NCBI RefSeq assembly: GCF_031769215.1
Contig: NW_026781910.1
Location: forward strand, 744,001-808,000
Length of the DNA: 64,000 nt
From: Ylistrum balloti
Taxonomy: Eukaryota
Direction of reading: 5' to 3'
This document shows, piece after piece, positions 13,401 through 37,245 of the stretch. The position numbers were made by a program, and so were the translations under genes. The first letter of the stretch is position 1. The number at the start of each line of letters is the position of its first letter. The notes under the pieces are model-generated. The model was given only the letters and a program-made list of their open reading frames with translations, was not told where the DNA came from and searched no databases.

Positions 13401-14424
13401 TTAATACATCCGACTTTGGTAATATAACACCATTGCAAATATTTTATACGTACAGCTTATACATACCTACAGCTTCACCGATCATAAACAATGCACACAG
13501 AACACAAACAGCAATAAGTTGGTTCCTGGCAAGTTTATCATACTCAGGTTTGACTAACGTATGACAGTGCCATTCTGATATTTCAGAATTAGATCTTGTT
13601 CCATTTACAGCATAACTGGACATTCCCAGATCTGCTTCCAGATCATCATCACTACTAAAAGATCTTAATGTTCTGTTGTTGTTTCTCACATGTGTTTCAG
13701 ACTGAGACTCATCAGGCCTTTCATTCATATGTAAATTGTCTACTCGAATTTTATCACTAACATTATCCGATTTCAGGTGTCCATTCGGTACATGATTTGA
13801 GATTGTACCATGGGCACGCTTGAAATTTTCTAGTACCCTTTTACTTTGAGTCATATCGGTTTCTGGTATCATATTAAGCTCCAGATCGAGTTTGTTTATA
13901 TCTGTGGCATCAAACTCCTCTAAAATAGCTAACAGAGAGTCCTCAGACATCGATCTTAAGTCCTGATGTGTGTTTTGCTGAATAGAAACCTCGGAGGGAA
14001 ATTGAAGCCTTGGTGTCGTCTGTATGTTATTGCCAATACTGGACAAGTTGTTATCATTTGGAGGATAAGTGGCAACTTCGAATGGCCACGTCCGGTTATT
14101 TCTGTCTAATAAAGCTGTGTCAATACGTTGTCCTTCTTGTATGTAAGGATCCGCACTGAAATCAGAGTCAATATGCTCGCTCGATGCGGCACTTACAAAT
14201 GGGCCAATTTCGGACTCGTGCTTGTTTACATCTTCATGCTGTTCAAGAGAACTGTTACTCACGGAGTGTACAGTCGTTTTGTGTGATACGCCTGTCTTAG
14301 GCCTAATGCTGCGTTCATTACGTAGACCAATGGTGTATTGCTCGCTCGAGCCTTCAGCTGTAAGGCTATTAATATCCGACACATCCCACCCACTGCTATC
14401 ATCGACGAACACACTTGCTGCCAT
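1465..14424 (-). CDS. slc30a2: SLC30/ZnT zinc transporter (ZnT2/3/4/8-like), exons 1-2; gene continues beyond the left edge
   Basis: Exon 1 is 14424-13467 (phase 1, GT donor) and exon 2 is 1611-1465. The spliced join reads FMIGEAVG|GVLSDSLALFTDVLHLGSDLISFLISLLAIYLSKKPATKNMSFGYHRA, with the TM2 HxxxD site (HLGSD), the FGYxR motif and the N-terminal HCH motif. Paralog-level symbol is uncertain. Confidence 0.9.
7797..8200 (+). mobile_element. Degenerate tRNA-derived SINE with an internal 14-bp tandem expansion
   Basis: GGGGCC head, B-box-like GGTTCAA, SINE-body-like GTGTCCATGGGCAAGACAC and an A-rich tail. AGGTGCA recurs at 7866, 7880, 7894, 7908, 7922 and 7936. Confidence 0.5.
9410..10020 (-). 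mobile_element. Penelope-like element remnant (GIY-YIG-like fragment plus decayed hammerhead)
   Basis: The minus strand reads *TKCTHCTKKYAGKT (9783-9827), similar to the PLE YxIxCxxCxxxYxGxT motif. It is followed by a hammerhead fold at 9539-9493 and a partial inverted duplication (9430-9462 vs 9871-9898). Confidence 0.45.
9493..9539 (-). ncRNA. Decayed minimal type I hammerhead ribozyme (G5A core change)
   Basis: AUCAUC-CUAAUGA-U-GGCUGC auuua GUGGUU-GAAAC-AU-GUC-GAUGAU: perfect 6-bp stem I, stem II held by G-U pairs, palindromic ACAUGU stem III. Confidence 0.6.
11070..12030. repeat. Diverged tandem array of about 157-bp units (6-7 copies)
   Basis: A CAAGAAATAGCGATAAC-like anchor occurs at about 11233, 11393, 11549, 11707, 11863 and 12008. 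Confidence 0.85.
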
Positions 14425-16830: not shown

Positions 16831-17292
16831 ACAATCACGCCACAGTTATTACAATACACACTTCCTTTACCAATGTAAAAACAATATCCGGTACACCAAA
16901 CAGTGTAAAACATGATACCAATAAAACAATGATAGTAGCCCTCTGTTATGTATTTACAATGAAGTAAAAGTATAAATTTATAGAAAGAACATAATATCGA
17001 TATTCTATCTATTTACGTTCTCATGCAGAGTAAATCTGATAAGTTCTGATGTAGTCGAGGTGATCCTTGTGTAATTGTAGATAAAGCATACACACATTTA
17101 ACACCTCTCTGTTGTCTTGTTCTCACACCAATTAACATAATAAAACTGAAAATTGCGAAACGGAAGATTTTGATATTTAATATGAAAGGACAAACATTAT
17201 AATATTCATCACTATTTGTTTTCTTAATGTTTCTGACAGCAGTTTTTTCAGTCAAGTGTTGATGGAACTGCACATCTTAGATACAGATATAT

Positions 17293-20200
17293 TTACATGA
17301 TTGAACACCTGAATGAACATTTCTGACGCCTTATTTTCCACTTCCTCTCGTATTCCTCAACATCACGAAGGTACGATAGCGGCGGCCATTGATTCACTTC
17401 AATATAGATTCTATTTTCTTCGTTCAGCGACGATAATTCCACCCGATTCTTCAATGCTGTATAGTTTGTAGAGATGAAATGAAGACACCATCTAGACAGC
17501 TGCTCTGCATTGTAATCCTGTCAAAATACATTCAAATACTGATATTTAAACAGAATTATTGCGGGACTATTTTTAATGAGGGGTTTCATTAGATCGAAAT
17601 AAAGAATGATAACTTAAAATAGTACATTAAAACTGCGCCTTTTATATGAAATATCATCAAATTTGATGCTAATGACGACATATATCAACATATCTTTACC
17701 TGTGATGACTGTAAAAGTCCGATGACATCGATGTCTGCTTTTTCTATAGTCTTTATCACACTTTTGTTGACTTCCTTAGTTACATGTAATTCACACAGAT
17801 TCGTGAGACGTTTAAGACCGTATTTATCCGCCAGAACAATGAGTGATATCACATCAGTCTGTTCAATAGGTGCCTGGTCGGTGTAGAGATATTCCAAAAG
17901 AGCCAAGAAACATTCCGACGTTGTAGCTTGGATATCAATCTACACCATTAAAACAACAAAATGTATTAGAAACATTTACTGTATTAACATGCTCAAACAT
18001 TTATATGCAGTTATAAGCATTTTAACTGTACGACTTTGAGGTTTTGATGTCAATTACACCTACCTCGAGTATGCTTGATTGGTCTTTCACACAGCTACCT
18101 TGAATCGTAACCGCCATGTTTTTGCATCTGGCAGTTAAGACACTTTTATGAGCATAAACATTTCTTCCTGAAACAATATGATATATACGATCTGTTCTTA
18201 CATTATGTAATTGACAATGTTACTGGACTTTAGATCCCCGTCCCCAGTATGCCACGTTTCGGTTTCATTAGGATAGTAGCAAGGTTAAGAATATAAACTT
18301 GTACTTAATGTTGTTATAAAATCATCTGATATATGGAAACAACGTAATTTGTTGCATAATCGGGCTGCTGCACTTCCCTATCTACATTTTGACTTTTGTT
18401 TGGACAACTTTCGATTTTCCTCAGTCGCCTCCAAGGCTTCAAAATTTAGGTCCTTTTCGTCAATAACGAGTCCTTGAAGGACGAAACAGCTGTATGATGC
18501 AGCATCACTGACGAGTCCTAGAAGGACGAAACAGCTGTATGATGCAGTTTAATTCATTGTTTGGCTGTAATGTATGTAACTCTAAATTTGTATTGAAAGA
18601 CGCTATTCAATTGCGTGTCTTTTGTACAATATCAATTGGTATAAGCAATTCTTATTTTCATCTCAAACTTCAATAGACCAGTAATGGGCATTAGTATAGC
18701 AAAATATAATTCACGAATTTAGAGCTGAAATGTTTGGCAGACGAAGTTAAAAAGAAAAAAAGGCAGGAAGAAATTCAAAGATTTCTTTAAAAATCCCCGA
18801 TTCAACAATAACATTCAGGAAGCAGCATTGTGACTTACGGTAAAGAGTTTGGAAGCGAGGTATGAAAAATGTTACACAGGAGTCTGCATTATCACTAAAT
18901 TTAAACAAGGCAATATTCGTATAATTTATTGCTATGTTGAGGTAAAAACAAATTTCAATGTTTTATATAGAAGTTTTCATTTCCGTGACAATTTACTTTA
19001 AGCACATATTTATAATAATTCAAGCTCACCTTCCACTTTAAACGTGACGTCAGCCGTTTCAGGTTTGTTGAAATACAGATCCTTCATATTTCGCCTTGTC
19101 TCGTCATTCATGGAAGTACCTATACTTGGATTAAGGAATGCCTGACCACTGAGACAATTTTGGCAAATCTCCGTCAATTTCGGCAATTTAAAAGTGGCAG
19201 CTAGATTCATGATGTCATCAAGTTCTTCTGGGTCAATTTGATCCTGGTCATTAGATAGACAGGGAACACCTGAGGAAACGCGATGTGTAGGTATATATTT
19301 GTATTTATATATTTTACCTTTTTAGGATTTATTAAGATTTTTTCGTTACAAACATGTACACATTTCTTTGATAATTAAGAAGGGAAATAACATTTCATTG
19401 AACGAACAGAAAATATAACAATTTGTTTAATAGTGATGATAATGTTTTTAATGCCCATTTCATAAAAACAATCTTATTCATCCTTTTCGTAAACAGTAAC
19501 TGTTTCTGATAACAAGGTATAAATGATGAGCAGGAATCAAACTTACCAGAGTACAGAAATTGCAGAACTTTGACGAATGTTTTGGGTTTGATATCAGGAT
19601 TAAGTTCAACCACTGTATGACGATGAATTTGACCTTGGATATCTTTTGTGAACTCGTCCTTGTCATATGCAGCTACTATTCCCTCCGTTTGCTCAGAGTT
19701 CAGTTCATCCATAGTGAAGTTACTCGCGGACTTCGTTCTCTTCCTCTGAAGAGTTGAACGAAAAAGAAAGAGCTCAAAAACTTTTGAAACAACATGAATA
19801 TGAAAAAAACATATATGGATGTTTGTCTTGAACACTAGATAAATTGTTCTGAAGGAGAAATCCTGTTTATCCTCAAATCTTTTAAAAGATGCAATCACTC
19901 GCAAATCAATATATCCAATATTTCGCTAACAATAATCAAGTTACCTTATGTGACTTCATCATTCCAAAGACTCGTCTGAAGTATGTGGAAGATGAACACA
20001 AAACTATCTTATGTGCGTCAAGGTTGAGCTGTTCTCTCAATATGAATGTAACGTCTGCATGAACAGGGTTTTCGTGCATAGCCAGCCAATCGTCTGCAAA
20101 CCTTGATGTTTCAACTTCAATTTTCGGGGCCATACCTAGAACACATTAGGAATAGATCAATCGAATTTGTGTATGTATATTGTATAACGATTCGTATATT

Positions 20201-23200
20201 TATACAATACACATACACAAATTCGTTTGATATAAGATAATGTAGTTGCGTATTGTTATAGAATTTTCCTACTGAAGAAACGTCGAGAAATTTAGTGTTT
20301 TACAACATATTCACGCTCCAGGTGATGGAGGAAAGTTGGTGTTCCCCACGATAAAACCAGGCGCCACTACCTGCGTCACGTAGTGCTCGAACCCGTGACC
20401 TAGAGATAAAGGACTAGTGATAAAGACGGCCAGGGGTCCGAGTCAACCTATATTGTATAGTGAACTGTTACTTAGTATTAGGGCCAATTTTACTTTTCAA
20501 ATAGATTTGGAACCCCGAAATTAAGTATTAAAAACATATAGTATTTTGACAAGCTACTATCAAGATTTATTTCTATAACTACAGTTTACACCTTTCTGTT
20601 TTGTTCTTAGAACCTAAGTGTAAATTTGATAAATCGAACTTCATATATGCATATCATTTCGTTCTTATAAACGACATGTCCTCTAATGTTTTATTGTTTA
20701 GAATTGAATTTTTCCGATACCATAGCAGGTTCTTTTCATACGTGGATTTAAACATGATGAATGCTATGTTATAAACATAATATAATGCACTTTTTGACAT
20801 TTCTCTTTTTGGCTGCATTAGAAACCACACAAAATAAATGTGTGAAAATCTCTTCAATTTATCAAATGGTGAAAATTTAACACTGAAATGGTATTGTAAA
20901 TACTGAAAACTGAGTTGTTCAGTAATTCAAACTGTCTTCCGATGATTGAGACGACCTACATAATTTTATGCACGATTCAAGAAAACTCGAGTTAAACATA
21001 TGGTCTATTCAAGCATATGTAAGTGAAGGTTCATGCACTACCACTCCCAACCAAAACTGGAATTATATGTAACAGATCAAAAGTATGAATGAAACCCCAA
21101 CAACCAGCTGTTTCCTCTCTCTAAGAATCGTCAGTGATGTTCTAGCAAATGTTAACTTGCCTGCAGGAGGCATCGGAGGAGGAGGGGGAATCCGTCCTCT
21201 ATTGCCACATGAGAACCATGGTTGGATTGTTGTTGTTGTCGCATTTACCAGCGCTACCCGGATCTAAAACATAATACCGAGGTGAACGATGAAAGGACAC
21301 ATATATTTAAATTCATATTGAATCAGGTATAATAACATATTACATACATTACCCAATTACAATTAAGTTTATTTTTTGAGGAATTACATTTTTCGCTATA
21401 TTCGAGGATTGAAAAAAATAGAAAAAATAGAAAGAAACCCACGTGACTCTGCTCTATTGTTTGAGCAATATATCAGGGTTTCGTGGATTTCTGATAATGG
21501 TTTAATGATTCTCTTGAAAATACACCATTTTTGGTGAAACTGCGATCGAAATGAATTAGTCTAAAACAAAGTGGATTAGAAATCTATAAATAGGTATTAT
21601 AAGTACATATATAAATGAACCCACAAAAATCAATTAATGATTTAAACCCGATAAAATCAGCAACATTAACTCACAAACCCCGACCCCCTTTTCTCTCTCT
21701 CCTCCCTCCCCTCCCCACTCCCTCTAAAAACTGGGCAGAAAAAACTCACTGCTGCATGAAAACATTCTTGTACACCTTGTTGTGTTCGCGCACTGGTCTC
21801 TACGTAACATAATCCTAAATCACTGGCGACCTTTGATCCTTCCTCATACGTCACTAAATCAGTTGCTGGTTTCTCTCTCAAATCTATAAATACGAAGAAT
21901 TATTCCAATAGGTTTCAAATAATATACATGTACATTATTACCATACGGAGTTTTGTCTCCTGATGGTAAATAATCAGTGAAATTGGCAATAGTTTATTGA
22001 AATGATTGTGTTTTCTTTTCCATTTTTAATGTCTTCATTTTATTTATGCATCACCGTAAGACTTGTGAAGAATCAACATTCAAAAAGATACAGGTAACAC
22101 TTTAGAATTATGAAAAAACAATGTTTTGATAATTGTTCAGAAAGATCAGGATGGTATTACCATAATGTCAAAAGTAACGTTTTTATAAGCATATATTAAT
22201 ACAATTAATCAATTTTGTGATATAAAAACCTTTACAAATATAACAAGATTTTTACTAAAAATATGTTCATTCAGAGTAAGGAGGAACAGAAACACAAAAT
22301 GCTGAATTTTCTTACCGATTTTGCAGGCATTAAGTACAATTGGCGTATTAGGACAAAAACGTCTAAGTTCTGGAACCCACTTAACCTTCACATTAGCAAG
22401 AGATTCTCGGTTGTCAATGGAAAAACAGACAAGAAATACATCTGTAAGAAAATAGGACAGCGGCCTCAGACGGTCATGGTCCTCCGACTGAAATAAGATA
22501 GCGAAATCATCGAAACGGGATTGACGAAGAATTTCACAATATAGATAGCTTTTGAAATAAAAACTTATTATTAAATAGAAATGGGTGGTCGGGTGGCGCA
22601 GGGTAACGCACTCGCCTTTTAACTAGCCGTCCGGGGTTCGAATCCCGTAACGGTCGTAAAAAGTAGTGGGGTCACCCGACCACATGTGCTTGCCCCAGCT
22701 ACTCTGGTTTCCTACCACAGTAAGACCCCCACCCCCGCGCTTCCATTCGGGCAGACAGAAGTGACTGATATAATCTTGTTTCGCAATTGTTGTAAGATAA
22801 ATAAAATTTGGATAAATAAATCCCAATAACTTGTTATAACTAGTACTTAATCCTTTCACCCAAATGGCTAGTAAAAATGAAATATTAAATCACATTTGAT
22901 TAAACTGGATATATATCCAAGGTAGAATATATTAATTTTATCGGTATCAAACATTCAGGAGCAAAAGTCCATGGTATTACAACAGTAACTTTTACAACTC
23001 GGATGGAGACAATCTTTTTGCATCTCCCCATTTCCAATCTCCAAAAGAGTGCATTAAGGTACCTTACATAATGCGCGTGTATAAGAAATGACAACTCCGG
23101 TACAGATGGTACAAAAGCCACACAAGTGAATTGCTTGTTTAAAACACAAGTTTAGAGCTAGATACAGTAGAGCCAAACAATGAATTAAACGTTTCATCCT

Positions 23201-23798
23201 TCTAAGACTAGTCTGTGATGCTAACGGCCCTAGTTCTAAAGGCTAGGCAACAATTGAGGAAATTCCAAAATGATCGGAAAAGAAGTGAAAATCTAAACGC
23301 GGAGATGCACAAGTCCCATTATGTAATGAATTTCGTGATTTTCATACCACAGATTATTTCAGAACAATGTCAAGTAATATGTACATTACACATGTACATT
23401 TACCAATTAGTGTAAAGTGCCTATATATGATTTTTTGGTAATTCATGGTATTAAAAGATTACAATACATACATTTGTATATTTGAATTTCTATCCGTTCA
23501 TCATTAATTATAATTCTAGCCGTTATTTATCTCTTGGAAACATGAAAATATTTTACTAAAAGTATGGTACGTTAAATGTGATTCAATGGTTGAAATTAAA
23601 CGCCCGGCTTACCGTTCCGTGTATATCCCACAAACCAAACCTAACAGGTGTTCCGTCAACTAATTCGTCGTGAACGTAATTATCAAACACCGTTGGGACG
23701 TATGTCTCTGGATAAGCATTCGTTGCATAGACGATGTATAGGCACGTCTTTCCTGTCGCGTGATCTCCTACTGTCACAATCTTCAGATCCTGTGGCAT
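17293..23798 (-). CDS. rhobtb: RhoBTB-type atypical Rho GTPase, copy 1 (597 aa, Rho + 2 BTB + CAAX)
   Basis: Exons: 23798-23613, 22487-22316, 21883-21750, 21263-21161, 20135-19945, 19745-19547, 19269-19030, 18167-18064, 17939-17700, 17517-17293. All phases are compatible (1794 nt). Motifs: [28 protein letters not shown], proline-rich [26 protein letters not shown], two BTBs ([16 protein letters not shown]), NQWPP, C-terminal CSIM. Confidence 0.93.
18463..18547 (+). ncRNA. Tandem minimal type I hammerhead ribozymes (one intact core, one core-mutated), 45-bp unit
   Basis: Stem I GCAUCA 18502-07, CUGACGA 18508-14, stem II GUCC/uagaa/GGAC 18515-27, GAAAC 18528-32, palindromic ACAGCUGU, cleavage triplet GUA 18537-39, then UGAUGC 18540-45. 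The upstream copy has AUAACGA in place of CUGACGA. Confidence 0.85.
20156..20231. other. 76-nt inverted repeat (32-bp arms, 12-nt loop) in RhoBTB-1 intron 4
   Basis: Arms 20156-20187 and 20200-20231, 30/32 Watson-Crick pairs. The same hairpin is at 35124-35199. Confidence 0.9.
20320..20450 (-). mobile_element. SINE-like fragment
   Basis: Minus-strand B-box-like GGTTCGAGC (20385-20393) in a GC-richer insert that is absent from the paralogous intron. Confidence 0.4.
22583..22900 (+). mobile_element. tRNA-derived SINE in RhoBTB-1 intron 1 (antisense)
   Basis: A box TGGCGCAGGGT (22594-22604), B box GGTTCGAATCC (22635-22645), SINE-body motif CTACTCTGGTTTCCTACCAC and an AT-rich tail. Absent from the shorter paralogous intron (371 vs 1125 bp). 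Confidence 0.75.
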
Positions 23799-32629: not shown

Positions 32630-35600
32630 TTACATGATTGAACACTTGGACGAGAATCTCCTATGCCTTATTTTCCACTTCCGCTCGTATTCCTCAACAT
32701 CACGAATGTACGATAGCGGCGGCCATTGATTCGCTTCAATAAAGGTTCTATTTTCTTCGTTCAGCGACGATAATTCCACCCGATTCTTGAATGCTGTATA
32801 GTTTGTAGAAATGAAATGAAGACACCATCTGGACAGCTGTTCTGCATTGTAATCCTGTCAAAATACATACAAATATTGATATTTAAACAGAATTACCGCG
32901 GGACTTTTTTCAATGATAGGTTTCATTAATGTATATACCAGATCTTTCATTTTCATAACAAATCGTATAATCGAAATTAGTGCATTTAATGAATAAAATA
33001 GAGGAGGAAAATTCTATATGATCATGCCTTTTAAAGGAAATATTTTACAGCTAACTACATATATCATCATATCTTTACCTGTGATGACTGTAAAAGTCCG
33101 ATGACATCGATGTCTGCTTTTTCTATAGTCTTTATCACACTTTTGTTGACTTCCTTAGTTATATGTAATTCACACAGATTCGTGAGACGTTTAAGACCGT
33201 ATTTATCCGCCAGAACAATGAGTGATATCACATCAGTCTGTTCAATAGGTGCCTGGTCGGTGTAGAGATATTCCAAAAGAGCCAAGAAACATTCCGACGT
33301 TGTAGCTTGGATATCAATCTACACCATTAAAACAACAAAATGTATTAGAAACATTTACTGTATTAACATGCTCAAACATTTATATGCAGTTATAAGCATT
33401 TTAACTGTACGACTTTGAGGTTTTGATGTCAATTACACCTACCTCGAGTAAGCTTGATTGGTCTTTCACACAGCTATCTTGAATCGTAACCGCCATGTTT
33501 TTGCATCTGGCAGTTAAGACACTTTTATGAGCATAAATGTTTCTTCCTGAAAGAAACAAGTGTCATTTATGATAATTCATTTTCACACTATGTAATATAT
33601 GATATTGCTTTGTTCCTTCTCGATTGATTTAAAATTGTTATTTCCAAAGCTAAGTTCAGCAGCCAGGTAATAAGTAACAGTACAGAAATAGACAAAAACA
33701 CGAAGATGGATCTCTTTTCAAATGCTTGTCGATTTCTGGGAAAATAAAAGATCAGAATAAGCATGAAGCAATTTGACGGATTTCTTAAAAATCATTAACT
33801 TGGTATTAAAATTGAAGGGTTGCCACTTAAAGACTGCTAAACTCAAAGCGTTTGGAAGCAAGGTATTATTTCTTACCTTCAGTACGTTTTCGTAACAGCG
33901 TGATATACAAACAGCTGCAGTAGAATTGAGCATTTGTTAGGCAATACTCTTATTATTTAATCAGATAATATATGTAATAGCTTCTCATGTATATACACTT
34001 TACTCTATGAAGCCATTCACAATAACTGAAGCTCACCTTCCACATTAAACGTGACGTCAGCCGTTTCAGGTGTGTTGAAATACAGATCCTTCATATTCCG
34101 TCTTGTTTCGTCAGTCATGGAGGTACCTATACTTGGATTAAGAAATGCCTGACCAGCGAGACAATTTTGACAAATCTCCGTCAGTTTCGGCAATTCAAAA
34201 GTGGCAGCTAGATTAATGATGTCATCAAGTTCTTCCGGGTCAATTTGATCCTGGTCGTTAGCTAGAGTGGGAACACCTGAGGAAACGCGATATATCGGTA
34301 TGTATTTGTATTCCAGCACCTATTACTATTTATTATGATTTTCCCGTTACTAACATGTACGTATTGTTTGGAAGGCAAGTCAAATTTTCCCATGAACGAA
34401 CAGCAAATATATCGATTCGTCTAATTCTTTAAGTAATTTTAATGCCCACGTTCTCTAACAGTGTTGTTTACCTTTCTTAAATAGTAAATATTTCGTGTTA
34501 TGATAACAAGATATAAATTACAAGTATGAATAAAACTTACCAGAGTACAGAAATTGCAGAATTTTGACGAATGTTTTGGGTTTGATATCTGGACTAAGTT
34601 CAACCACTGTATGACGATGACCTTTACGTTGGGTATCCTTTGTTAACTCGTCCTTGCCATATACAGCTACTATTCCCGCTATTTGTTCAGAGTTCATTTC
34701 ATACATAGTGAAGTTACTCGCGGACTTCGTTCTCTTCCTCTGAAGAGTTAAACGAAAAAGAAAGAGTTTTAAAACGTTTGGAACAACACGAATATGAAAC
34801 ACTGAATAAAATTCTTCATAAGGAGAAATTCTTCTTATCCTCAAATCTTTCAAAAGATACAATGACTCGCAAAACAATATATCCAATATTTCACTAACAA
34901 TAATCAAGTTACCATATGTGACCTCATCATTCCAAAGACTCGTCTGAAGTATGTGGAAGATGAACACAAAACTATCGTATGTGCGTCAAGGTTGAGCTGT
35001 CCTCTCAATATGAATGTAACGTCTGCATGAACAGGGTTTTCGTGCATAGCCAGCCAATCGTCTGCAAACCTTGATGTTTCAACTTCAATTTTCGGGGCCA
35101 TACCTAGAACATATTAGGAATAGATCAAACAAATTTGTGTATGTATATTGTATAACGATTCGTATATTTATACAATATACATACACAAATTCGTTTGATA
35201 ACAGATTGCGATTTGTTATATTATTTCCCTACTAAAGAAATGAAGAGTAAAAAAGGTCAATGACATTATGTAATTTTACCTTCCTAATTAATGCAATTGA
35301 AAATGAAAAAAATCTAGTATTTCGACAAGCTACCATCAAGATGTACATCTACAACTACAGTCTACACTTTTCTGTTTCGTTCTAAATGTGCTAAATGCAG
35401 AATCGAGCTACACCTACATGTTAAGTTTCGATCTTATAAATGACCTATAATATTTACTTTGCTCTAAACTGATTATCTACTTGTGTCTACTATCTGCTGT
35501 ATGTGGCTCTAAATTTGCGTTAAAAAGTTCCAACATTTTCTGTACATTCTTCTACATCAAAATAAGTAAATTTCACATCTAAATAAATTATTAAATGGAT

Positions 35601-37245
35601 AAAGCGGAGGAAAGTCAATGCATATATGAAAAATGTAAGCCAAATAATGAATTAAACTACGTTATTAGTTCTTTCCGCCTTCCAGGACTCCTAATTGATA
35701 CACTAACAAAACCACGCTCGTGTTAACTTGCCTGCGGAAGGCATTACAGGAGGAGGGGGTATCCGTTTTCTATTGCCACAAGAGAACCATGGTTGAATCG
35801 TTGTTGTTGTCGCCTTAAGCAACGCTTCCCTGATCTAAAACATAATACCGCGATTGACAATAAACGAACACATCATATCTACATTAGTATATAATCATAT
35901 ATCACTTGTTACGTATGTGCTTTACTAAATCACTATGAAGGTTACTTGTCTGTGGAATAATATTGCTCACCGTATTCGAGGATTGAATAAAATTGAATAG
36001 ATACAGGAATATATGAACTATCACAATAAGCGGGTGCATCGTTATCTGACATTCGTAAGGTGTCCGAAATTGCATCTTTCACACAATTACCTTCGCCTAA
36101 TACTGATTTGATTTGGTATAGAGCAAAGGAATAAGTAATCTACCAAAACATGAGCTTCGTGATATTATTGACAGAACAAGACTCACTGCTGTATGGAAAC
36201 CGTCTTTTACTCCTTGTTGTGTTCGTGCACTAGTTTCTATGTAGCATAATCCTAAATCACTGGCGAACTTTGACCCTTCTTCACGCGTCACCAAATCAGC
36301 TGTTGGTTTATCTCTCAAATCTATAAGATAGACAAGAATTATTCTAGCATTTTTCAACTGTTCCTAGAAAAAGTGGCTTGTATCTTTACACTTAATTCAT
36401 TGTGTGATATAACAAGATTTACTCTAAATATTTATCTTCACTCAGAGTAAGGGCAGAAAAAGCAAAAATAACAAATCCTTCTATTCTACATATCTTAAAA
36501 CTGTTGAAATTCTTACCTACTTTGCAGGCAGCGAGTACAATTGGCGTATTAGGACAAAACCGTCTTAGCTCTGGAACCCACTTAACCTTCACATTAGCAA
36601 GAGATTCTCTGTTGTCAATGGAAAAACAGACAAGGAATACATCTGTAAGAGGATAGGACAGCGGCCTCAGAAAGTTCTGCTCCTCCGACTGAAATATCAG
36701 ATTTAACACATCACTGAGTACAGTAACTAATGATTTATCATAGAAGAGAACGACTTCTTCCCTGAAATTAATAAAGAGGTCATTATGATAACACCTGTGT
36801 TGGCCCTCAAGATAATATTTAAGCTAACGCAACGGCTGATGTTGACAGAAAAATCCGTTTAGTGTAAATTTGCTTCTCGTTATTTTTAAATTATGATGTT
36901 AGTAGAAACCTGACTTGACTTGATTTGAATCTATTATCGCTACACTGATAGAATAATAATAAAAAACGGGGAGTAACTCTGCTACATCTGATAAAATTAA
37001 TTAACATGCTTGAAGACTGATATTCATCGTTTTGAAATATGAAAATGTGATTGGCTTACAGTTCCATGTGTATCCCACAAACACACACTGACAGGTGTTC
37101 CGCAGACCATGTCATCTTCAACGTAATTTTCAAACACTGTAGGAACGTATGTCTCGGGGAATGTATTCTTTGCATAGGCAATGAATAGACAAGTCTTCCC
37201 CGTGGCTTGATCTCCAACCGTGACAAGCTTTAGATCATATGGCAT
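32630..37245 (-). CDS. rhobtb: RhoBTB-type atypical Rho GTPase, copy 2 (597 aa, CAAX)
   Basis: Exons: 37245-37060, 36688-36517, 36320-36187, 35834-35732, 35103-34913, 34739-34541, 34276-34037, 33546-33443, 33318-33079, 32854-32630. Exon lengths are the same as copy 1. [14 protein letters not shown], ends SSKCSIM*. Confidence 0.93.
35124..35199. other. 76-nt inverted repeat in RhoBTB-2 intron 4
   Basis: Arms 35124-35155 and 35168-35199, 31/32 Watson-Crick pairs. Confidence 0.9.

What the first reader, a model, noticed from the sequence alone, without database searches (positions are those of the whole stretch)
18463..18547. Tandem hammerhead ribozyme pair: one catalytic core plus one substrate-only copy
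Seen: the second 45-bp unit is a complete minimal type I hammerhead (CUGACGA, GUCC/GGAC stem II, GAAAC, GUA site, 6-bp stem I) whose stem III is only the palindrome ACAGCUGU. The first unit has lost its core (C3A, G5A) but keeps the palindrome and GUA. The two palindromes (18486-93 with 18531-38) can form an 8-bp stem III, with stem I UGAUG/CAUCA closed by CAG, giving a full hammerhead that would cut after 18494; the monomer fold would cut after 18539. Known: tandem minimal hammerheads with palindromic stem III act as dimers in Penelope-like elements and retrozymes. This pair is antisense to RhoBTB-1 intron 7, absent from the paralog, and has no retroelement ORF nearby. Inference: the footprint of a small non-autonomous ribozyme-bearing retroelement family, possibly a source of antisense or circular RNA.
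Basis: partly seen in the sequence, partly recalled or inferred. Interest (0 to 1): 0.8.

Follow-up and report, generated by a model that had tools for sequence, protein, structure and literature searches.

The report
Decayed copy of hammerhead-ribozyme mobile repeat
The two hammerhead ribozyme units are real, but they are one old, ordinary copy of a roughly 450-base non-coding mobile repeat present thousands of times in this (apparently scallop) genome, a kind of ribozyme-carrying retroelement already described in animals.

Summary
Window 18458-18547 (+) is two head-to-tail 45-nt units. Unit B is a complete type I hammerhead (Rfam 34.1 bits, cut-off 34). Unit A has a dead core (C3A, G5A). Across the junction the units form a full type III-style hammerhead (46.7 bits, cut-off 48.5, E 2e-8), predicted to cut after A18494.

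It is not a special pair. The motif occurs about 17,900 times in the 648.5-Mb genome. The flanks belong to a repeat with more than 4,000 candidate copies. Each copy has a head of about 270 bp, then 1 to 35 or more hammerhead units (two is commonest in my sample), then an 87-bp tail with a sharp 3' end. The 5' ends vary, and the longest copies begin with a piece of the tail or a truncated upstream copy. That pattern matches the more-than-unit insertions described for Penelope-like elements and retrozymes.

The window copy (18238-18630, probably from about 18175) is 7-16% diverged from the family majority. It sits antisense in an intron of a Ras+BTB (RhoBTB-type) gene. About half of the sampled units keep intact cores, roughly as neutral decay predicts.

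Cleavage, transcription and the autonomous partner are untested, because no RNA run was available. The scan had already found this family on other windows.

The parts
18175..18193 (+). Probable remnant of the family's tail end placed upstream of the head (the more-than-unit 5' extension); weak
   Evidence: In alignment A2 it lines up with ...GTCTTTTGTACAATCT of other full-length copies. Identity is low, and BLAST support starts only at 18238.
18194..18457 (+). HEAD region of the repeat (non-coding, about 270 bp in full copies; this copy has an 11-bp deletion near 18238)
   Evidence: Homology to 29 other loci over 18238-18457. 84% identity to the family majority. The extension to 18194 rests on alignment A2.
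18458..18502 (+). Hammerhead unit A. The core is inactivated (AUAACGA: C3A, G5A), but helix II, the palindrome ACAGCUGU (18486-93) and the GUA site (18492-94) are kept
18494..18495 (+). Predicted scissile bond (after A18494) of the cross-unit hammerhead
   Evidence: Rfam Hammerhead_3 alignment and the fold. Not tested biochemically.
18503..18547 (+). Hammerhead unit B. It is complete as a type I monomer, with only a 2-bp helix III capped by the loop AGCU. Monomer site after A18539
   Evidence: Rfam Hammerhead_1 at 34.1 bits against 34.
18486..18538 (+). Complete type III-style hammerhead formed from the 3' part of unit A and the 5' part of unit B (8-bp helix III, 5-bp helix I with loop CAG, 4-bp helix II)
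   Evidence: Rfam 46.7 bits, E 2e-8. It is the minimum-energy fold of this stretch, and also of 18455-18538 and 18455-18545.
18548..18632 (+). TAIL region of the repeat, ending ...GCGTGTCTTTTGTACAAT(AT). This is the sharp 3' boundary of the family
   Evidence: 89% identity to the family majority.
17778..17948 (-). Downstream BTB exon of the host Ras+BTB (RhoBTB-type) gene; context only, not part of the element
   Evidence: Pfam BTB positions 51-107, E 9.9e-6.
19395..20073 (-). Upstream BTB exon(s) of the host gene; context only. The element lies in the intron between these and 17778-17948, on the opposite strand
   Evidence: BTB positions 6-49 at 19948-20073. Weak BTB match (19.5 bits, just under Pfam's 20.5 cut-off) in ORF 19395-19904.

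Best explanation
Window about 18175/18238-18632 (+) is one old, solitary insertion of an abundant, non-coding, hammerhead-bearing retroelement family. The family is retrozyme-like, and its insertions have the shape seen in Penelope-like elements (PLEs).

The family unit is a head of about 270 nt, then two or more spacer-less 45-nt hammerhead units, then a tail of about 87 nt.

Shown: each 45-mer is a type I hammerhead whose helix III is only 2 bp with a palindromic loop. Two neighbouring units complete each other. The palindromes pair into an 8-bp helix III. The UGAUG-CAG-CAUCA junction closes helix I. The downstream unit's core then faces the upstream unit's GUA site.

Inferred life cycle: a transcript that spans more than one unit is cut at the ribozyme sites. 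The unit-length RNA, which contains the tail-to-head junction, is possibly circularised by a host ligase. A PLE-type reverse transcriptase/endonuclease then copies it, starting at a fixed 3' site (...GUACAAUCU) and stopping at variable points. This would give the sharp 3' ends, the 5'-truncated copies, and the copies that begin with a piece of tail or a truncated upstream unit.

At this locus the copy is dead as a mobile element. It is solitary and 7-16% diverged, and unit A's core is lost. One cross-unit ribozyme is still intact on paper. If the + strand (antisense to the host gene) is transcribed at all, the RNA would most likely be cut once, after A18494.
For: - Hammerhead identity: Rfam hits in the window. 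Other family copies reach 50.5 bits for type III, above the 48.5 cut-off.
- Abundance: 9155 + 8726 motif hits against 0 for the reversed control pattern. First-look candidates for head plus flanks number 3949 and 4696. In run X1 the summed depth over the units is 4-5 orders of magnitude above the unique flanks.
- Family anatomy from 30 copies: head, then n units, then tail, with n = 1-35 and mode 2.
- Boundaries: homology in the window is confined to 18238-18630. The 3' end is sharp at ...TTTTGTACAAT(CTT). BLAST-mapped 5' starts range from head position 1 to 182.
- More-than-unit copies: the longest copies carry 10-65 nt of tail end before the head, or a truncated upstream copy, for example at C434, C442 and C327.
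- Literature match: more-than-unit insertions, pseudo-LTRs and a 30-40-bp 'tail' are described for PLEs (PMC8557442; PMC4209133). Retrozymes of about 170-400 nt with type I hammerheads are described in animals, including repeats of 350-390 bp at about 5000 copies in a mussel (PMC7229834).
- A candidate partner exists: the genome encodes PLE ORFs with reverse transcriptase plus GIY-YIG, some copies 99-100% identical.
- Decay looks neutral: 89 of 191 units have an intact core and 17 of 30 elements keep at least one complete cross-unit ribozyme. Identity to the family majority is 0.84 for heads, 0.88 for tails and 0.91 for units.
- Fold timing: the hammerhead fold is the minimum-energy fold while the RNA ends at 18538-18545.
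Against: - No RNA data exist for this locus or family. The only run found is DNA-like contigs.
- No cleavage assay has been done.
- Loops 1 and 2 are minimal (3 and 5 nt), so the loop-loop contacts that make natural hammerheads fast at low Mg2+ are probably missing. PLE-type minimal hammerheads cut poorly in vitro (PMC4209133).
- Once 18550 is transcribed, a competing fold is 6.8 kcal/mol more stable. With the full head attached, the hammerhead fold is 1-3 kcal/mol above the minimum.
- There is no covariation support: 94.6% of cells pair, against 94.5% in shuffles.
- The PLE link is structural only. No hammerhead and no head or tail homology lies within 1.5 kb of 20 GIY-YIG loci (PLE candidates), apart from one family copy 1.3 kb away, about what chance gives. 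None of the listed PLE ORFs lies near a listed family copy.
- Target-site duplications are not established; there are only two 8-9-bp candidates.
- Whole-unit tandem arrays, typical of described animal retrozymes, are the exception in my sample.
Confidence: 0.85

Rival explanations
1. The family is a SINE-like element moved by a LINE (non-PLE) reverse transcriptase. The hammerhead array would be a passenger, or would serve only to trim the transcript.
For: The copies are dispersed and mostly solitary, with a sharp 3' end and variable 5' truncation. That pattern also fits LINE-type target-primed reverse transcription. No sequence link to a PLE was found. Earlier notes of this scan report other hammerhead-like folds in LINE 3' UTRs of this genome (not checked here).
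Against: There is no poly(A) or simple-repeat tail. The head gives no tRNA, 5S or 7SL match at E up to 10. Copies that start with a piece of the element's own tail, or with a truncated upstream unit, are a hallmark of PLEs and retrozymes rather than of SINEs.
Confidence: 0.08
2. This is a DNA-level repeat, either a satellite seed or a repeat carried by a Helitron or DNA transposon. The hammerhead would be an inherited relic with no role in spread.
For: The 45-bp arrays expand at the DNA level. L057 shows a higher-order period of about 487 bp. One array has units at exactly 180-bp spacing. Variant units cluster within arrays. Conservation is uniform across the unit, with core and loops alike, and there is no covariation.
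Against: The ends have no Helitron signature (5' TC, 3' CTRR with a hairpin) and no terminal inverted repeats. The 5' truncation and more-than-unit copies point to an RNA template. In two-unit copies both units start out as complete hammerheads, which implies the master copies keep the ribozyme intact.
Confidence: 0.05
3. The pair has been co-opted by the host, for example to cut an antisense transcript or otherwise regulate the RhoBTB-type gene.
For: One cross-unit ribozyme is still intact. The element is intronic and antisense.
Against: The copy is as diverged as other family members. Unit A has decayed. The element is absent from the tandem paralog. About half of sampled two-unit copies (7 of 14) keep an intact cross-unit ribozyme by chance alone. 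There is no expression evidence.
Confidence: 0.02

Closest known systems
Animal non-LTR retrozymes (Cervera & de la Pena 2020, PMC7229834; Li, Clavereau & Pollet 2026 preprint, 10.64898/2026.07.22.740005)
   Same: Both are non-coding, AT-rich repeats of a few hundred bases that carry type I hammerheads with a 4-bp helix II and a short palindromic helix III. Both occur at thousands of copies. A bivalve (mussel) has repeats of 350-390 bp at about 5000 copies. Both are proposed to depend on PLEs.
   Different: Here each element carries two or more back-to-back 45-nt hammerheads with no spacer, so the 'dimer' forms in cis within one element. Copies are mostly dispersed singles or partial tandems rather than long arrays of whole units. 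Circular RNA is not shown. Sequence relatedness to the mussel elements could not be checked.
Hammerheads in pseudo-LTRs of Penelope-like elements (Cervera & de la Pena 2014, PMC4209133; Craig et al. 2021, PMC8557442)
   Same: The ribozyme lies near the 3' end, has a palindromic helix III and is thought to act as a dimer. Insertions are more-than-unit, with a 5'-truncated upstream copy or a short 'tail' extension. PLE reverse transcriptase plus GIY-YIG ORFs are present in this genome.
   Different: There is no ORF in or near the element. No sequence similarity to the sampled PLE copies was found. This hammerhead is the canonical animal type I form (4-bp helix II, 5-6-bp helix I), not the min-HHR with a long helix II.
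Hammerhead satellites (newt satellite 2, Schistosoma Sm-alpha, Dolichopoda pDo500) and the double-hammerhead of Forster et al. 1988 (as cited in PMC4209133)
   Same: These are tandem DNA repeats that encode type I hammerheads needing a second copy to build a stable helix III.
   Different: Their repeat units are 330-500 bp with one ribozyme each. Here the repeating unit inside the array is the 45-nt ribozyme itself, and the array is embedded in a dispersed mobile element.
Plant LTR retrozymes (Cervera et al. 2016, PMC4918200)
   Same: They are non-autonomous, carry two hammerheads per element, and have a type III fold.
   Different: The plant elements have LTRs of about 350 bp, each with one ribozyme, plus PBS and PPT motifs and 4-bp duplications, and they depend on Gypsy elements. 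None of these features is seen here.

Membership tests
Hammerhead ribozyme (Rfam RF00163 type I / RF00008 type III) | Conserved core CUGANGA ... GAAA and a cleavage triplet NUH | tested here: met
   Unit B has CUGACGA (18508-14) and GAAA (18528-31). GUA sites lie at 18492-94 and 18537-39. Unit A's core, AUAACGA, fails.
Hammerhead ribozyme (Rfam RF00163 type I / RF00008 type III) | Three helices around the core, scored by covariance model at or above the curated threshold | tested here: met
   Type I scores 34.1 against 34. The cross-unit type III fold scores 46.7 against 48.5 in the window, while sister copies reach 50.3-50.5.
Hammerhead ribozyme (Rfam RF00163 type I / RF00008 type III) | Helices supported by compensatory changes among relatives | tested here: inconclusive
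   Across 24 independent copies, 94.6% of cells pair against 94.5% in shuffles, and one pair changes on both sides. The copies are too alike to test this.
Hammerhead ribozyme (Rfam RF00163 type I / RF00008 type III) | Site-specific self-cleavage in Mg2+ | not testable with these tools
   This needs an in vitro transcription and cleavage assay.
Animal non-LTR retrozyme | Non-coding, low-GC repeat of about 170-450 bp carrying a type I hammerhead | tested here: met
   The element is about 393-458 bp with 37-38% GC. There is no ORF of 90 aa or more inside it.
Animal non-LTR retrozyme | Whole units arranged head-to-tail in tandem (dimers to multimers) | tested here: inconclusive
   The window copy is solitary. 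In the family, partial tandems and tail-to-head junctions occur, but most sampled copies are single.
Animal non-LTR retrozyme | Expressed as linear and circular RNA of unit length | not testable with these tools
   No RNA run holds the locus. The one run laid is DNA-like contigs.
PLE-dependent non-autonomous element | More-than-unit insertions: a 5'-truncated upstream copy or a 30-40-bp tail extension, a fixed 3' end and a variable 5' end | tested here: met
   Shown at family level. For the window copy the evidence is weak.
PLE-dependent non-autonomous element | Autonomous PLE (reverse transcriptase plus GIY-YIG) present in the same genome | tested here: met
   ORFs of 755 aa carry RVT_1 and GIY-YIG. 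Tandem copies are 99-100% identical. There are 421 first-look candidates.
PLE-dependent non-autonomous element | Sequence shared with a PLE's pseudo-LTR or 3' end | tested here: not met
   No similarity was found in 20 GIY-YIG loci (PLE candidates) with 1.5 kb each side. The sample is small, and further DNA could not be fetched.
tRNA/5S/7SL-derived SINE | Pol III-type head related to a small RNA gene, and an A-rich or simple-repeat tail | tested here: not met
   No such Rfam match in 17000-20000 at E up to 10. The tail ends ...TTTTGTACAAT(CTT).
Helitron/Helentron-borne repeat | 5' TC, and 3' CTRR preceded by a hairpin (or short terminal inverted repeats) | tested here: not met
   The ends were read in 20 or more copies and none of these signatures is present.

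The most novel reading that the evidence does not exclude
The family may be an undescribed retrozyme architecture in bivalves. Two spacer-less 45-nt hammerheads would form a built-in double hammerhead in cis. That module, rather than a distant second copy, would process more-than-unit transcripts into the (possibly circular) template that a PLE enzyme copies. It would also make every array junction a potential type III ribozyme. The window copy would then be a fossil that still holds one working junction.
Probability: 0.3. Interest if true: 0.5.

Novelty: new member of a known kind. Interest (0 to 1): 0.3.

Why it matters
For this locus, little. It is a neutral-looking fossil in an intron.

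For the family, more. It would add a bivalve example to the link between hammerhead retrozymes and Penelope-like elements. Its layout is unusually compact: the 45-nt ribozyme is itself the repeat unit, readable as type I within a unit or as type III across a junction. I did not find this layout in the papers I could search.

With about 18,000 near-identical natural variants in one genome, the family could serve as a ready-made mutational series for the minimal hammerhead. It could also test whether such elements spread through circular RNA.

Tried and rejected
- **Chance motif:** rejected.
- **Single-copy element:** rejected.
- **Designed 'ribozyme plus substrate' pair:** rejected. Both units are intact in most two-unit copies, and unit A simply decayed.
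- **Selection on hammerhead units after insertion:** not supported. Conservation is uniform across core and loops. Units are only modestly less diverged than head and tail. There is no covariation.
- **Physical link to PLE ORFs:** looked for and not found. The family copy in L061 near a GIY-YIG fragment is about what chance predicts.
- **Target-site duplications:** a k-mer search gave only two candidates, TTTTCAGGA in L043 and CTTATAAT in L051, which is not convincing.
- **RNA evidence:** Laying it showed only that a contig bridges the 5' junction (18129-18442). The 3' junction is not covered.
- **Fetching larger PLE and array regions:** As a result, array-size statistics, the partner search and young copies rest on 60 loci. 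Thirty of those were picked by similarity to the two-unit window copy, which biases the count towards two units.
- **Literature search for the exact unit sequence:** nothing relevant.
- **Species identity:** not established by me. 'Scallop' comes from earlier notes of the scan.
Full report
**1. The observation**

Window 18458-18547 on the + strand holds two head-to-tail 45-nt units.

- **Unit B (18503-18547).** It has the hammerhead core CUGACGA (18508-14), helix II GUCC/GGAC, GAAA (18528-31), a 2-bp helix III capped by the palindromic loop AGCU, and the site GUA (18537-39). Helix I is 5-6 bp (18502/3-07 with 18540-44/45). Rfam calls it Hammerhead_1 at 34.1 bits, against a curated cut-off of 34.
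- **Unit A (18458-18502).** It differs from the family majority unit by C3A and G5A in the core (AUAACGA), plus A2G and a change in loop 2. It keeps helix II, the palindrome and GUA.
- **The cross-unit fold.** Over 18487-18537 Rfam finds a full-length Hammerhead_3 match at 46.7 bits (cut-off 48.5, E 2e-8). Helix III is 18486-93 with 18531-38. Helix I is 18495-99 with 18503-07, closed by CAG. The scissile bond follows A18494. Stretch 18486-18538 folds into it as its minimum-energy structure.
- **Chance.** The core pattern is absent from 100 shuffles of the window.

**2. It is not a special pair**

- A 32-nt pattern with up to 2 mismatches hits the 648.5-Mb genome 9155 + 8726 times. The reversed control pattern hits 0 times. 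Most hits lie in arrays with a 45-bp period.
- The flanks are repeated too. Window 18230-18600 finds 3949 first-look candidates, and the scored ones are 75-84% identical.
- Against 29 fetched loci, homology covers 18238-18630 and nothing beyond.
- In the one public run that holds the locus (DNA-like contigs), a contig bridges the 5' junction (18129-18442). Summed depth over the units is 4-5 orders of magnitude above the unique flanks.

**3. Anatomy of the family (30 copies)**

- Each copy has a HEAD of about 270 bp, then n hammerhead units, then a TAIL of about 87 bp.
- The unit count n runs from 1 to 35. Two is the commonest count (14 of 30). My sample was picked by similarity to a two-unit query, so it leans that way.
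- The 3' end is sharp...GTGTCTTTTGTACAAT(CTT), after which the flanks are unrelated.
- The 5' end is variable. BLAST-mapped starts range from head position 1 to 182, and about 8 of 30 copies lack more than 100 bp of head.
- The longest copies do not start at the head. They begin with 10-65 nt of the tail's own end or with a 5'-truncated upstream copy running straight into a full one, as at C434, C442 and C327.
- By alignment, the window copy also seems to carry such a remnant (18175-18193) and a nearly full head with an 11-bp deletion. Identity there is low.
- The window shows no ORF, no tRNA/5S/7SL-like head and no poly(A). Copy ends read across the family show no inverted termini and no Helitron ends.

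**4. State of decay**

- Identity to the family majority averages 0.84 for heads, 0.88 for tails and 0.91 for units in elements with three or fewer units. The window copy scores 0.84, 0.89 and 0.93.
- Conservation within the unit is flat, with loops as conserved as the core.
- 89 of 191 units keep an intact core. 17 of 30 elements, and 7 of 14 two-unit elements, keep at least one complete cross-unit ribozyme.
- In most two-unit copies both cores are intact. The window's 'core plus substrate-only' layout is therefore the result of mutation, not design.
- Across 24 independent junctions, 94.6% of cells pair, against 94.5% in shuffles. The case for the fold rests on its match to the hammerhead consensus, not on covariation. 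Sister copies pass Rfam's type III cut-off at 50.3-50.5 bits.

**5. How it most likely works**

*Shown:* neighbouring units complete each other into a compact hammerhead of about 53 nt. That fold is the minimum-energy structure while the transcript ends at 18538-18545. Once 18550 is made, a competing pairing of the quasi-palindromic 3' parts is 6.8 kcal/mol better. With the whole head attached, the hammerhead fold lies 1-3 kcal/mol above the minimum. Cleavage would therefore have to be co-transcriptional.

*Inferred:* in copies longer than one unit, two ribozyme sites would release a unit-length RNA that contains the tail-to-head junction. A host ligase could circularise it. A reverse transcriptase would start at the fixed ...GUACAAUCU site and run a variable distance, sometimes past one full turn. 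That would produce exactly the ends seen. This is the model proposed for PLEs and retrozymes (PMC4209133; PMC7229834; PMC8557442; preprint 10.64898/2026.07.22.740005).

The genome does encode PLE ORFs with RVT_1 plus GIY-YIG, some in 99-100% identical tandem copies. However, I found no hammerhead and no head or tail similarity within 1.5 kb of 20 GIY-YIG loci (PLE candidates). None of the listed PLE ORFs lies near a listed family copy. The partner is therefore not identified.

The minimal loops (3 and 5 nt) suggest slow cleavage at physiological Mg2+, as reported for PLE-type minimal hammerheads.

**6. This locus**

The host gene runs on the minus strand. It has Ras exons at 23616-23783 and 22317-22484, and BTB exons at 19948-20073, within 19395-19904, and at 17778-17948. 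That is a RhoBTB-type architecture. A tandem paralog has Ras exons at 37060-37230 and 36518-36685 and a BTB exon at 33157-33327.

The element lies antisense in the intron between the BTB exons. The paralog has no hammerhead. A solitary copy has no second, distant ribozyme site, so it cannot release a unit-length RNA. At most, an antisense transcript would be cut once, after A18494. No RNA run was available, so transcription is unknown.

**7. Comparison and novelty**

The kind is known: animal hammerhead retrozymes, PLE-linked hammerheads and hammerhead satellites. The family differs in having spacer-less 45-nt units, which give a cis double hammerhead, and in being mostly dispersed rather than arrayed as whole units. 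I found no description of this layout in the papers I could search.

The scan had already met this family on other windows of the same genome and read it in much the same way. I checked the main claims independently here. 'Scallop' comes from those notes, not from my own tests.

**8. Limits**

- Target-site duplications are not established; there are two 8-9-bp candidates.
- Cleavage, transcription and circular RNA are untested.

Noticed in passing
L066:1974-2070 and L067 (G000:C129), just after the stop of a 755-aa RT+GIY-YIG ORF: A run of CCCTAA-like repeats (reverse-complement telomere-type units) follows the PLE ORF directly. Such repeats are described for endonuclease-lacking, telomere-attached PLEs, but this element has the endonuclease domain. 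The C422 copies diverge from it at this point.
   Followed up: no
G000:C422:239575-262222: Five or more tandem copies of a PLE ORF (RVT_1 + GIY-YIG, 755-aa open frame) recur with a period of about 5.36 kb and are 97-100% identical. This looks like a recently active or recently duplicated Penelope-like element.
   Followed up: partly
G000:C389:270935-271232: About six tandem repeats with a 47-bp period, derived from the tail-end/head-start junction of the family (query positions 105-156 of L039:1330-1760). This is a second part of the element that has turned into a mini-satellite.
   Followed up: no
L057:1716-2934; G000:C19:1174834-1175945: The hammerhead arrays show higher-order structure. In L057 the pattern of unit variants repeats about every 487 bp. 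In C19, intact units recur at exactly 180 bp (4 x 45) and carry the same UUGAA loop-2 variant as unit A of the window. This points to array growth by DNA-level duplication.
   Followed up: partly
L038:25-1580 and L039:1729-1928: Whole arrays are dominated by units with an inactive CAGACGA core (U4A). Dead units therefore still amplify within arrays.
   Followed up: no
window 17778-23783 and 33157-37230, minus strand: Two tandem Ras+BTB (RhoBTB-type) genes lie in the same orientation. Only the downstream one carries the hammerhead element in its intron.
   Followed up: partly
window 13444-14424, minus strand: A 326-aa ORF with no Pfam match lies downstream of the BTB exons. It may be the C-terminal exon of the host gene.
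   Followed up: no
L061:3040-3255 (G000:C879): The 5' end of a family copy (tail remnant plus head) lies 1.3 kb downstream of a degenerate GIY-YIG fragment. By the family's density this is about what chance predicts, but it is the only case of proximity seen.
   Followed up: partly
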